From Haliotis rubra (lineage: Eukaryota), in contig NW_025767634.1 of the NCBI RefSeq assembly GCF_003918875.1, positions 1,054,001-1,118,000 of the forward strand: 64,000 nucleotides of DNA. The letters run 5' to 3'. The position numbers were made by a program, and so were the translations under genes. The notes under the pieces were generated by a model. That model saw only the letters and a list, made by a program, of their open reading frames with translations, was not told where the DNA came from and ran no database searches. This document shows positions 1,686 through 44,732 of the stretch, piece after piece. Position 1 is the first letter of the stretch; the number at the start of each line of letters is the position of its first letter.

Positions 1686-44732
<43,047 letters not shown>

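What the first reader, a model, noticed from the sequence alone, without database searches (positions are those of the whole stretch)
39101..39127. 10-nt stop-codon microexon that would remove the non-helical tailpiece (SM2-like isoform switch)
Seen: tcacctttcag|GAGACATTAG|gtaacg lies in the last intron. Spliced to the phase-2 upstream exon it reads ...KF-R-R-H-stop, replacing the 36-aa S/T-rich acidic tail. The stop is the last codon of the exon, so it should escape junction-dependent NMD. The surrounding 2.4 kb has no recognisable repeats and carries TGCATG at 38642, 38730, 40266 and 40386 plus several GCATG. Known: vertebrate MYH11 makes SM1/SM2 by including a short stop-containing exon at the equivalent place, and the tailpiece controls filament assembly and phosphorylation. 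Inference: an invertebrate myosin II may produce head (loop 1) and tail isoforms by two microexons, convergent with smooth-muscle myosin.
Basis: partly seen in the sequence, partly recalled or inferred. Interest (0 to 1): 0.78.

Follow-up and report, generated by a model that had tools for sequence, protein, structure and literature searches.

The report
Myosin tail switch: real exon elsewhere
The proposed 10-letter stop exon in the last intron of this mollusc non-muscle myosin II gene is a chance match with no RNA support. A different 28-letter stop-carrying exon 660 bases further on is spliced in and swaps the 37-residue tail for an 8-residue one, as vertebrate smooth-muscle myosin does.

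Summary
The letters are as described: ttcag|GAGACATTAG|gtaacg at 39112-39121, in the 6.1-kb last intron of a non-muscle/smooth-type myosin II heavy-chain gene. It reads R-R-H-stop after the phase-2 exon that ends at 38515.

The bare pattern is at chance level. Simulated introns of this size and composition give 0.94 such sites, and 59% have at least one. RNA contigs of four runs from three related species show no junction at it. In a relative it carries a C>T change, and it is no better conserved than the DNA around it.

The same RNA shows a real cassette exon at 39780-39807 (28 nt, tgtcag|ACAAAG..GATTAGGTT|gtaagt). It is joined to 38515 upstream and to the last exon at 44621 downstream. Its stop lies 3 nt before the junction, so the protein ends ..[12 protein letters not shown] instead of carrying the 37-residue S/T-rich acidic tail.

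Included and skipped forms coexist at roughly 1:1 in one run. Inclusion dominates in another. Only the skipped form is seen in the two runs of the window's own species.

The cassette lies in a 56-nt block identical between species. All ten intronic GCATG motifs are conserved.

I class this as a new member of a known kind, of moderate interest.

The parts
38346..38515 (+). Penultimate constitutive coding exon. It encodes the end of the coiled-coil rod (LDKVNN...SQLRKF) and ends in phase 2 (AG|).
   Evidence: Translation. Pfam Myosin_tail_1 positions 1025-1078 of 1081. Best PDB matches are Myosin-10, Myosin-11 and Myosin-9 residues ~1873-1925. mRNA contigs of all four runs cover exactly 38343-38516, with loose ends on both sides that match the neighbouring exons.
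39112..39121 (+). No evidence that it is used.
   Evidence: Sequence. No joint at 39112 or 39121. C>T at 39116 in locus L001 and in run X8. Chance expectation is 0.94 per intron.
38516..39779 (+). Upstream sub-intron (1264 nt). It is unusually conserved and partly retained in RNA of two related species.
   Evidence: 87-96% identity to L001 per 100 nt up to about 39545, as high as the coding exon at 94%. One contig spans 38487-39805 at depth 118.6, against exon depth 2908, in X8. In X11 the depth is 85-130, against exon depth 367.
39780..39807 (+). Real alternative cassette exon, 28 nt: ACAAAGTGAAATGCAGCAAGATTAGGTT. The stop TAG is at 39802-39804, and the protein ends ...[12 protein letters not shown].
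   Evidence: Joint 38515->39780 with GT..AG ends, depth 911.5 (X8) and 244.1 (X11). Pieces 39776/39779-39808 are followed by a loose end equal to the start of the last exon. Sequence, translation. It is 100% identical in L001 and lies inside a 56-nt perfect block, 39764-39819.
39808..44620 (+). Downstream sub-intron with donor GTAAGT. It contains a lineage-specific insertion at about 40.93-44.38 kb that includes a tyrosine-recombinase-type element.
   Evidence: Donor. L001 aligns to 38312-40933 and then jumps to 44384-45318. The ORF at 41868-42659 hits Phage_int_SAM_1. GC is 50% at 42-44 kb.
44621..44732 (+). Last coding exon. It encodes the long non-helical tailpiece (R)[36 protein letters not shown] and its stop, and the 3'UTR follows.
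   Evidence: Loose ends behind 38516 (skipped form) and behind 39808 (included form) read CC(A/T)TC(C/A)TCTCGAAGCACGACGAC.., which is this exon.
38643..40391 (+). Ten GCATG motifs, starting at 38643, 38731, 39292, 39585, 39673, 39898, 40024, 40201, 40267 and 40387. Four of them are TGCATG. They flank the cassette.
   Evidence: 10 observed against 3.8 expected (P = 0.007). All 10 are conserved in L001, where only about 50% of 5-mers are (P about 3e-4 to 9e-4). None of the 40 other frequent 5-mers is fully conserved.

Best explanation
The 10-nt GAGACATTAG is a chance AG...stop...GT coincidence inside a conserved intron, not an exon in use. The gene makes its tail isoforms with a different cassette, the 28-nt exon at 39780-39807.

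Shown: when this exon is skipped, 38515 is joined to 44621 and the heavy chain ends in a 37-residue, Pro-initiated, S/T-rich then acidic non-helical tailpiece. When it is included (38515->39780, 39807->44621), the reading frame meets TAG 3 nt before the last exon junction and the protein ends in the 8 residues RQSEMQQD.

Inferred: a stop that close to the last junction is expected to escape junction-dependent NMD. The choice is probably tissue-regulated, most likely through Rbfox-type factors that bind the ten conserved GCATG motifs in the flanking intron. The slowly removed or retained upstream sub-intron would be part of that regulation. By analogy with SM1/SM2, the short tail should change filament assembly and remove the phosphorylatable and acidic segments.
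For: - **The gene is non-muscle/smooth-type myosin II.** Rod exons match Myosin-11, -10 and -9 at E 1e-34 to 1e-37, against 1e-9 for sarcomeric Myosin-7.
- **Splicing evidence.** The runs behave as RNA: contigs of 3.5-7.1 kb stop exactly at the exon borders and continue into the neighbouring exons. X1 and X2 (the window's species label) show only 38515->last exon. X8 and X11 (two related species) show a GT..AG joint 38515->39780, a 28-nt piece, then the last exon. X8 also has the skipped form (depth 783, against 911 for inclusion).
- **No joint or piece ends at 39112 or 39121.**
- **Conservation.** The cassette and its splice sites are identical in L001, inside the second-longest perfect block of the intron (56 nt). 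It forms a 94% identity peak flanked by 73% and 80%.
- **The 10-mer is unremarkable.** It has one substitution, sits in uniformly conserved sequence, and is expected by chance 0.94 times.
- **GCATG motifs** are enriched and all conserved.
Against: - All the RNA data are assembled contigs, which drop minor variants. A rarely included or tissue-restricted 10-nt exon could be missed, and some loose ends and pieces were not listed.
- No aligner places a 10-nt piece reliably.
- In the window's own species only the skipped form was seen (two runs). Inclusion there is inferred from the identical sequence.
- The AG, GT and TAG of the 10-mer are all kept in the relative.
- A 49-nt perfect block lies just upstream of the 10-mer.
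- Regulation by Rbfox and the effect on filaments are inferred, not tested.
Confidence: 0.8

Rival explanations
1. The 10-nt exon is real but used only rarely or in a tissue not sampled (for example neurons). It would then be a third tail isoform ending in RRH.
For: AG, GT and TAG are kept in L001 and X8 despite a C>T inside it. It lies in a strongly conserved sub-intron, next to a 49-nt perfect block. Contigs cannot show absence.
Against: No junction in four RNA runs of three species. The pattern is expected by chance 0.94 times. The polypyrimidine tract is weak and the donor is GTAACG. Its conservation is no higher than that of its surroundings.
Confidence: 0.08
2. The retained upstream sub-intron is itself a product. 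Transcripts that read through the 38515 donor would encode a third tail, [13 protein letters not shown]-stop.
For: A contig spans 38487-39805 at 4% (X8) to about 25-35% (X11) of exon depth. No contig lies just downstream of the cassette. The sub-intron is 87-96% conserved. The read-through frame and its stop are kept in L001 (P0001).
Against: 3 of the 13 read-through codons changed between the species. That stop lies about 1.2 kb upstream of later junctions, so such an mRNA should be an NMD target or nuclear-detained. In X1 and X2 the intron depth is low and even, like pre-mRNA.
Confidence: 0.12
3. The cassette junctions are an artefact: chimeric de Bruijn contigs, or transcripts of a paralogue in the related species.
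For: The junction pieces are short unitigs of 31-59 nt, and the runs come from other species.
Against: Two runs from different species and studies give the same joint. It has canonical GT..AG ends, and both sides continue into the correct exons. The exon is perfectly conserved, with consensus splice sites. The region is single-copy in this genome.
Confidence: 0.03

Closest known systems
Vertebrate smooth-muscle myosin MYH11 SM1/SM2 tail isoforms
   Same: The gene belongs to the same myosin class (non-muscle/smooth type II). A small cassette exon sits in the intron directly after the end of the coiled coil. It carries an in-frame stop that replaces a long tailpiece with a short unique one: 43 versus 9 residues in SM1/SM2 (PMC2173570), 37 versus 8 here. 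In an ungapped alignment the junction falls within about one residue of the vertebrate splice site after Arg1935.
   Different: The cassette peptides share no sequence similarity (RQSEMQQD against GPPPQETSQ; the latter is from memory). The exon is 28 nt here; my recollection of 39 nt for the vertebrate exon was not confirmed in PMC2173570 (one search found no such phrase). Homology versus convergence is not established: another invertebrate clade (L017-L019) has the same phase-2 junction but only a 318-620-nt last intron with no cassette. The functional consequences are untested.
Differentially included C-terminal exons of invertebrate muscle Mhc genes (Lottia Mhc6, Capitella Mhc; Kollmar & Hatje 2014, PMC3912159) and Drosophila Mhc exon 18 (from memory)
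   Same: Optional 3' exons change the non-helical tailpiece of a myosin II heavy chain in molluscs, annelids and insects.
   Different: Those are sarcomeric or muscle Mhc genes. This gene is the non-muscle/smooth-type paralogue, for which my paper searches found no such description.
Rbfox/(U)GCAUG-regulated alternative exons, such as the MYH10 N30/B1 exon (Fox-1 family review PMC2777236)
   Same: GCATG motifs are enriched and fully conserved in the introns flanking a small regulated exon of a non-muscle myosin II gene.
   Different: Here only the motifs are seen; no binding or dependence has been tested. The nearest motifs are 107 nt upstream and 91 nt downstream of the cassette.

Membership tests
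SM1/SM2-type tail switch of non-muscle/smooth myosin II | The host gene is a non-muscle/smooth-type class II myosin heavy chain | tested here: met
   Rod exons match Myosin-11, -10 and -9 at E 1e-34 to 1e-37, against 1e-9 for Myosin-7. The last rod exon behaves likewise. Pfam gives Myosin_tail_1 and Myosin_head.
SM1/SM2-type tail switch of non-muscle/smooth myosin II | The cassette exon lies in the intron between the end of the coiled coil and the tailpiece exon, and is spliced to both | tested here: met
   Joint 38515->39780, and loose ends behind 39808 that equal the last exon. Sequence.
SM1/SM2-type tail switch of non-muscle/smooth myosin II | The cassette carries an in-frame stop and gives a shorter unique C-terminus | tested here: met
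   AG|A CAA AGT GAA ATG CAG CAA GAT TAG reads RQSEMQQD-stop, against the 37-residue tail.
SM1/SM2-type tail switch of non-muscle/smooth myosin II | Both isoforms are expressed | tested here: met
   X8 has the skipped form (depth 783) and the included form (911). X11 is mostly included, and X1/X2 show only the skipped form. These are contigs, so the ratios are rough. In the window's own species only the skipped form was seen.
SM1/SM2-type tail switch of non-muscle/smooth myosin II | The cassette is homologous (by common descent) to the vertebrate SM2 exon | tested here: inconclusive
   The junction position matches to within about one residue. There is no peptide similarity. No cassette was found in another invertebrate clade or recognised in more distant mollusc-like loci.
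SM1/SM2-type tail switch of non-muscle/smooth myosin II | The tail isoforms differ in filament assembly | not testable with these tools
   Shown for SM1/SM2 in PMC2173570. It needs expressed rods of both abalone isoforms.
Rbfox-regulated exon | (U)GCAUG is enriched and conserved in the flanking introns | tested here: met
   10 against 3.8 expected (P = 0.007). 10 of 10 are conserved, against about 0.5 expected per site.
Rbfox-regulated exon | Inclusion depends on an Rbfox protein | not testable with these tools
   Needs a knock-down or a minigene with mutated motifs.
   No joint at 39112 or 39121 in four RNA runs. Contigs can miss rare forms.
   0.94 expected by chance. It has one substitution, and identity equals that of the surrounding sub-intron.

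The most novel reading that the evidence does not exclude
The stop-cassette tail switch at the end of the rod is an ancestral property of the bilaterian non-muscle/smooth myosin II gene. It would sit at the same phase-2 junction and have been inherited by vertebrate MYH11, rather than being a vertebrate smooth-muscle invention. The conserved 1.26-kb upstream sub-intron of abalone would then host further Rbfox-controlled terminal mini-exons, namely the 37-nt candidate at 39249-39285 and possibly the 10-mer.
Probability: 0.12. Interest if true: 0.65.

Novelty: new member of a known kind. Interest (0 to 1): 0.4.

Why it matters
Invertebrates have a single non-muscle/smooth-type myosin II that serves both the cytoskeleton and, in many lineages, smooth-type muscle. 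A tail switch like SM1/SM2 in a gastropod shows that control of filament assembly by exchanging the tailpiece is not confined to vertebrate smooth muscle. It also gives a concrete, testable pair of isoforms (37-residue against 8-residue tail), with a candidate regulatory code of ten conserved GCATG motifs.

For annotation, it replaces a plausible-looking but unsupported microexon with the RNA-supported one. It also warns that stop-ending AG..GT mini-exons are expected by chance in any intron of several kilobases.

Tried and rejected
- **Distant comparison.** ORF fragments of relatives gave genomic loci L002-L015. Their last introns share no significant similarity with the window, and no cassette could be recognised without RNA.
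- **A look-alike in L002** (tttttcag|AGACACCTAG|tgagac, R-D-T-stop) was rejected. The shared AGACA is in a different codon register, no GT follows, and similar acceptor-plus-short-stop candidates occur several times per intron.
- **L002-L009** are about 98% identical to each other, so they are useless for footprinting.
- **A second clade (L017-L019)** has the same phase-2 AG| junction but a last intron of only 318-620 nt, with no conserved cassette.
- **Rfam** found nothing in 38200-41200.
- **A paper search for the run accessions** gave nothing.
- **Searches for tail splicing of invertebrate non-muscle myosin** found only muscle-Mhc cases.
- **The bacterial promoter/terminator scan** is irrelevant to this eukaryotic gene.
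- **The large representative-protein search** was not run.
- **Reads.** Read laying was given 3,001 letters, within the 6,000 limit. Both flanking exons could not be put in one stretch, because they lie 6,106 nt apart.

Full report
**1. What is at the coordinates.** The window's + strand carries most of a class II myosin heavy-chain gene.
- The exon at 38346-38515 translates to [56 protein letters not shown] and ends with AG before gtatgt.
- The last coding exon starts at 44621 behind tttcag. It reads (AG)G, then [36 protein letters not shown] and a stop.
- The 10-mer GAGACATTAG lies at 39112-39121, between ..cacctttcag and gtaacg.
- The gene is the non-muscle/smooth type. A 142-residue rod exon matches Myosin-11, -10 and -9 at E 1e-34 to 1e-37, against 1e-9 for sarcomeric Myosin-7. 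The last rod exon matches residues ~1873-1925 of Myosin-10 and -11. Pfam gives Myosin_tail_1 and Myosin_head.
- Earlier notes of this scan call the genome Haliotis rubra. I did not test that. The assembly has 1.378 Gb in 2,855 contigs.

**2. Is the 10-mer more than chance?** No.
- In the 6,105-nt intron, the pattern 'AG, 10 nt whose first in-frame stop is the last codon, GT' occurs once.
- 300 first-order Markov simulations give a mean of 0.94, and 59% of them contain at least one.
- For all lengths of 4-40 nt there are 10 observed, against 11.3 +/- 4.1 expected.
- The acceptor has a weak pyrimidine tract and the donor is GTAACG.

**3. RNA evidence.** The look-up of sequencing runs listed runs of the window's species label (organism A) and of relatives (organisms B, C and D). 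I laid X1 and X2 (A), X8 (B) and X11 (C) on window:38200-41200. All were Logan contigs.
- **They behave as RNA.** In each run a contig of 1.3-7.1 kb covers exactly 38343-38516. It continues on the left into ..GACCAGTATAAGGAA, which is the end of the preceding exon (window about 37949-37988; one search gives CAATAT there, a one-base difference), and on the right into other sequence.
- **X1 and X2.** At exon depth 83 and 34, the right-hand continuation is CCATCCTCTCGAAGCACGACGACAGCCCGC, which is the last exon. Intron contigs lie at an even depth of 3-5 along the whole stretch, as pre-mRNA would.
- **X8 and X11.** A joint with GT..AG ends skips 1,264 nt from 38515 to 39780 (depth 911.5 and 244.1). 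Short pieces cover 39776/39779-39808. The loose end behind 39808 is CCTTCATCTCGAAGCACGACGACGGCCCG, again the last exon.
- **X8 also has the direct join** from 38515 to the last exon (depth 783).
- **Nothing at the 10-mer.** No joint, piece end or listed loose end falls at 39112 or 39121.

**4. The real cassette.**
- The sequence is ccactctctgttgtcag|ACAAAGTGAAATGCAGCAAGATTAGGTT|gtaagt.
- The exon is 39780-39807 (28 nt). The g at 39808 is shared with the first base of the last exon, which puts the donor at the consensus GTAAGT.
- In phase 2 it reads AGA CAA AGT GAA ATG CAG CAA GAT TAG, that is R-Q-S-E-M-Q-Q-D-stop.
- The stop lies 3 nt before the last exon junction. By the usual 50-55-nt rule (established knowledge) it should therefore not trigger junction-dependent NMD.
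- Inclusion replaces the 37-residue tail, which starts with Pro, is S/T-rich and basic, then acidic, with an 8-residue tail.

**5. Conservation.** The word search with the 56-residue exon returned ORF fragments called on genomic contigs of relatives. P0001 led to L001, a 5.5-kb contig of a close relative.
- L001 aligns to 38312-40933 at 84% and then to 44384-45318. It therefore lacks about 3.4 kb that the window has. That extra DNA contains an ORF with a phage-integrase SAM-like domain, so it is a tyrosine-recombinase element.
- Identity per 100 nt is 87-96% from 38516 to about 39545, against 94% for the exon. It falls to 73% at 39646-39745, peaks at 94% at 39746-39845, and is 62-86% beyond that.
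- The cassette with both splice sites is identical in L001. It sits in a 56-nt perfect block, 39764-39819, which is the second longest of the intron.
- The 10-mer reads GAGATATTAG in L001 and in X8. AG, GT and TAG are kept, but at about 92% local identity that is unremarkable.

**6. Regulation (inferred).**
- GCATG occurs 10 times in 38516-40900, against 3.8 expected (P = 0.007). TGCATG occurs 4 times against 1.9 (P = 0.135).
- All ten GCATG are conserved in L001, although only 50% of 5-mers in the alignment are. The probability is 9e-4, or 3e-4 with local rates.
- None of the 40 other 5-mers that occur eight or more times is fully conserved.
- This is the signature of Rbfox-type control (Fox-1 family review PMC2777236, title and abstract as listed; the paper was not opened). 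No dependence has been tested.
- The upstream sub-intron is held as one contig, 38487-39805, at 4% (X8) to about 25-35% (X11) of exon depth. No contig lies just downstream of the cassette in those runs. This suggests the downstream sub-intron is removed first and the upstream one slowly, or that it is detained.

**7. How far it reaches.**
- More distant loci (L002-L015) share no intron similarity with the window, and I could recognise no cassette in them.
- A 10-nt look-alike in L002 is in another codon register and lacks a GT donor.
- A separate clade (L017-L019) shares the phase-2 AG| junction. Its last intron is only 318-620 nt and has no conserved candidate.
- The cassette is therefore documented only within this genus-level group. 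Ancestry versus convergence with MYH11 stays open.

**8. Comparison with what is known.**
- SM1 and SM2 differ by 43 versus 9 unique C-terminal residues and assemble differently (PMC2173570). Their splice site follows Arg1935 of the gizzard chain. In the ungapped alignment that is within about one residue of the junction here.
- Optional C-terminal exons are described for muscle Mhc genes of Lottia and Capitella (PMC3912159) and, from memory, for Drosophila Mhc exon 18.
- My searches found no description for an invertebrate non-muscle/smooth-type gene. Automatic isoform models may nevertheless already contain it, and I could not check that.

**9. Verdict.**
- The finding to keep is the 28-nt stop cassette at 39780-39807.

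**10. Limits.**
- The evidence comes from contigs only, from four runs with coded identities.
- Depth ratios are rough.
- The included form has not yet been seen in the window's own species.
- Some rows were not listed.

Noticed in passing
window 39249-39285: A 37-nt candidate exon (ccatgcag|TCTAAAATG..AAGTGAAAG|gtattc). In phase 2 it reads [11 protein letters not shown]-stop, with the stop 3 nt before the donor, the same design as the real cassette. It lies in the longest perfectly conserved blocks of the intron (39207-39266 and 39268-39299), and a conserved GCATG sits 6 nt after its donor. No RNA joint was seen.
   Followed up: partly
window 38516-39779: The upstream sub-intron is as conserved as coding sequence (87-96% to a relative). 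It is present as one continuous RNA contig at 4% to about 30% of exon depth in two related species. It may be a detained or retained intron, or dense splicing control.
   Followed up: partly
window about 40934-44383: About 3.4 kb that is absent from the relative's intron. It is GC-rich (50%), and the ORF at 41868-42659 hits Phage_int_SAM_1, so it is probably a tyrosine-recombinase (DIRS/Crypton-like) element inserted in the last intron.
   Followed up: partly
window 41018-41130: A short stretch on which many unrelated RNA contigs of all four runs lie, with loose ends on both sides. It is a dispersed repeat that is expressed within other transcripts.
   Followed up: no
window about 14000-20000: A GC-rich block (52-57%) with long open frames, inside an intron of the motor-domain part of the gene. 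Three of its frames gave no Pfam hit. It is probably a mobile element.
   Followed up: partly
window 54500-56300, 58100-60100, 61400-62400: Long tandem arrays are visible as periodic open frames (units of about 150 nt at 58-60 kb). Another note of the scan covers 58090-59990.
   Followed up: no
L017:10164, L018:10164, L019:10209: Non-muscle myosin II genes of another invertebrate clade end their last rod exon at the same phase-2 AG| junction. Their glycine-rich then acidic tail exon follows only 318-620 nt downstream. The junction is old, but the cassette is not universal.
   Followed up: yes
It was not examined here.
   Followed up: no
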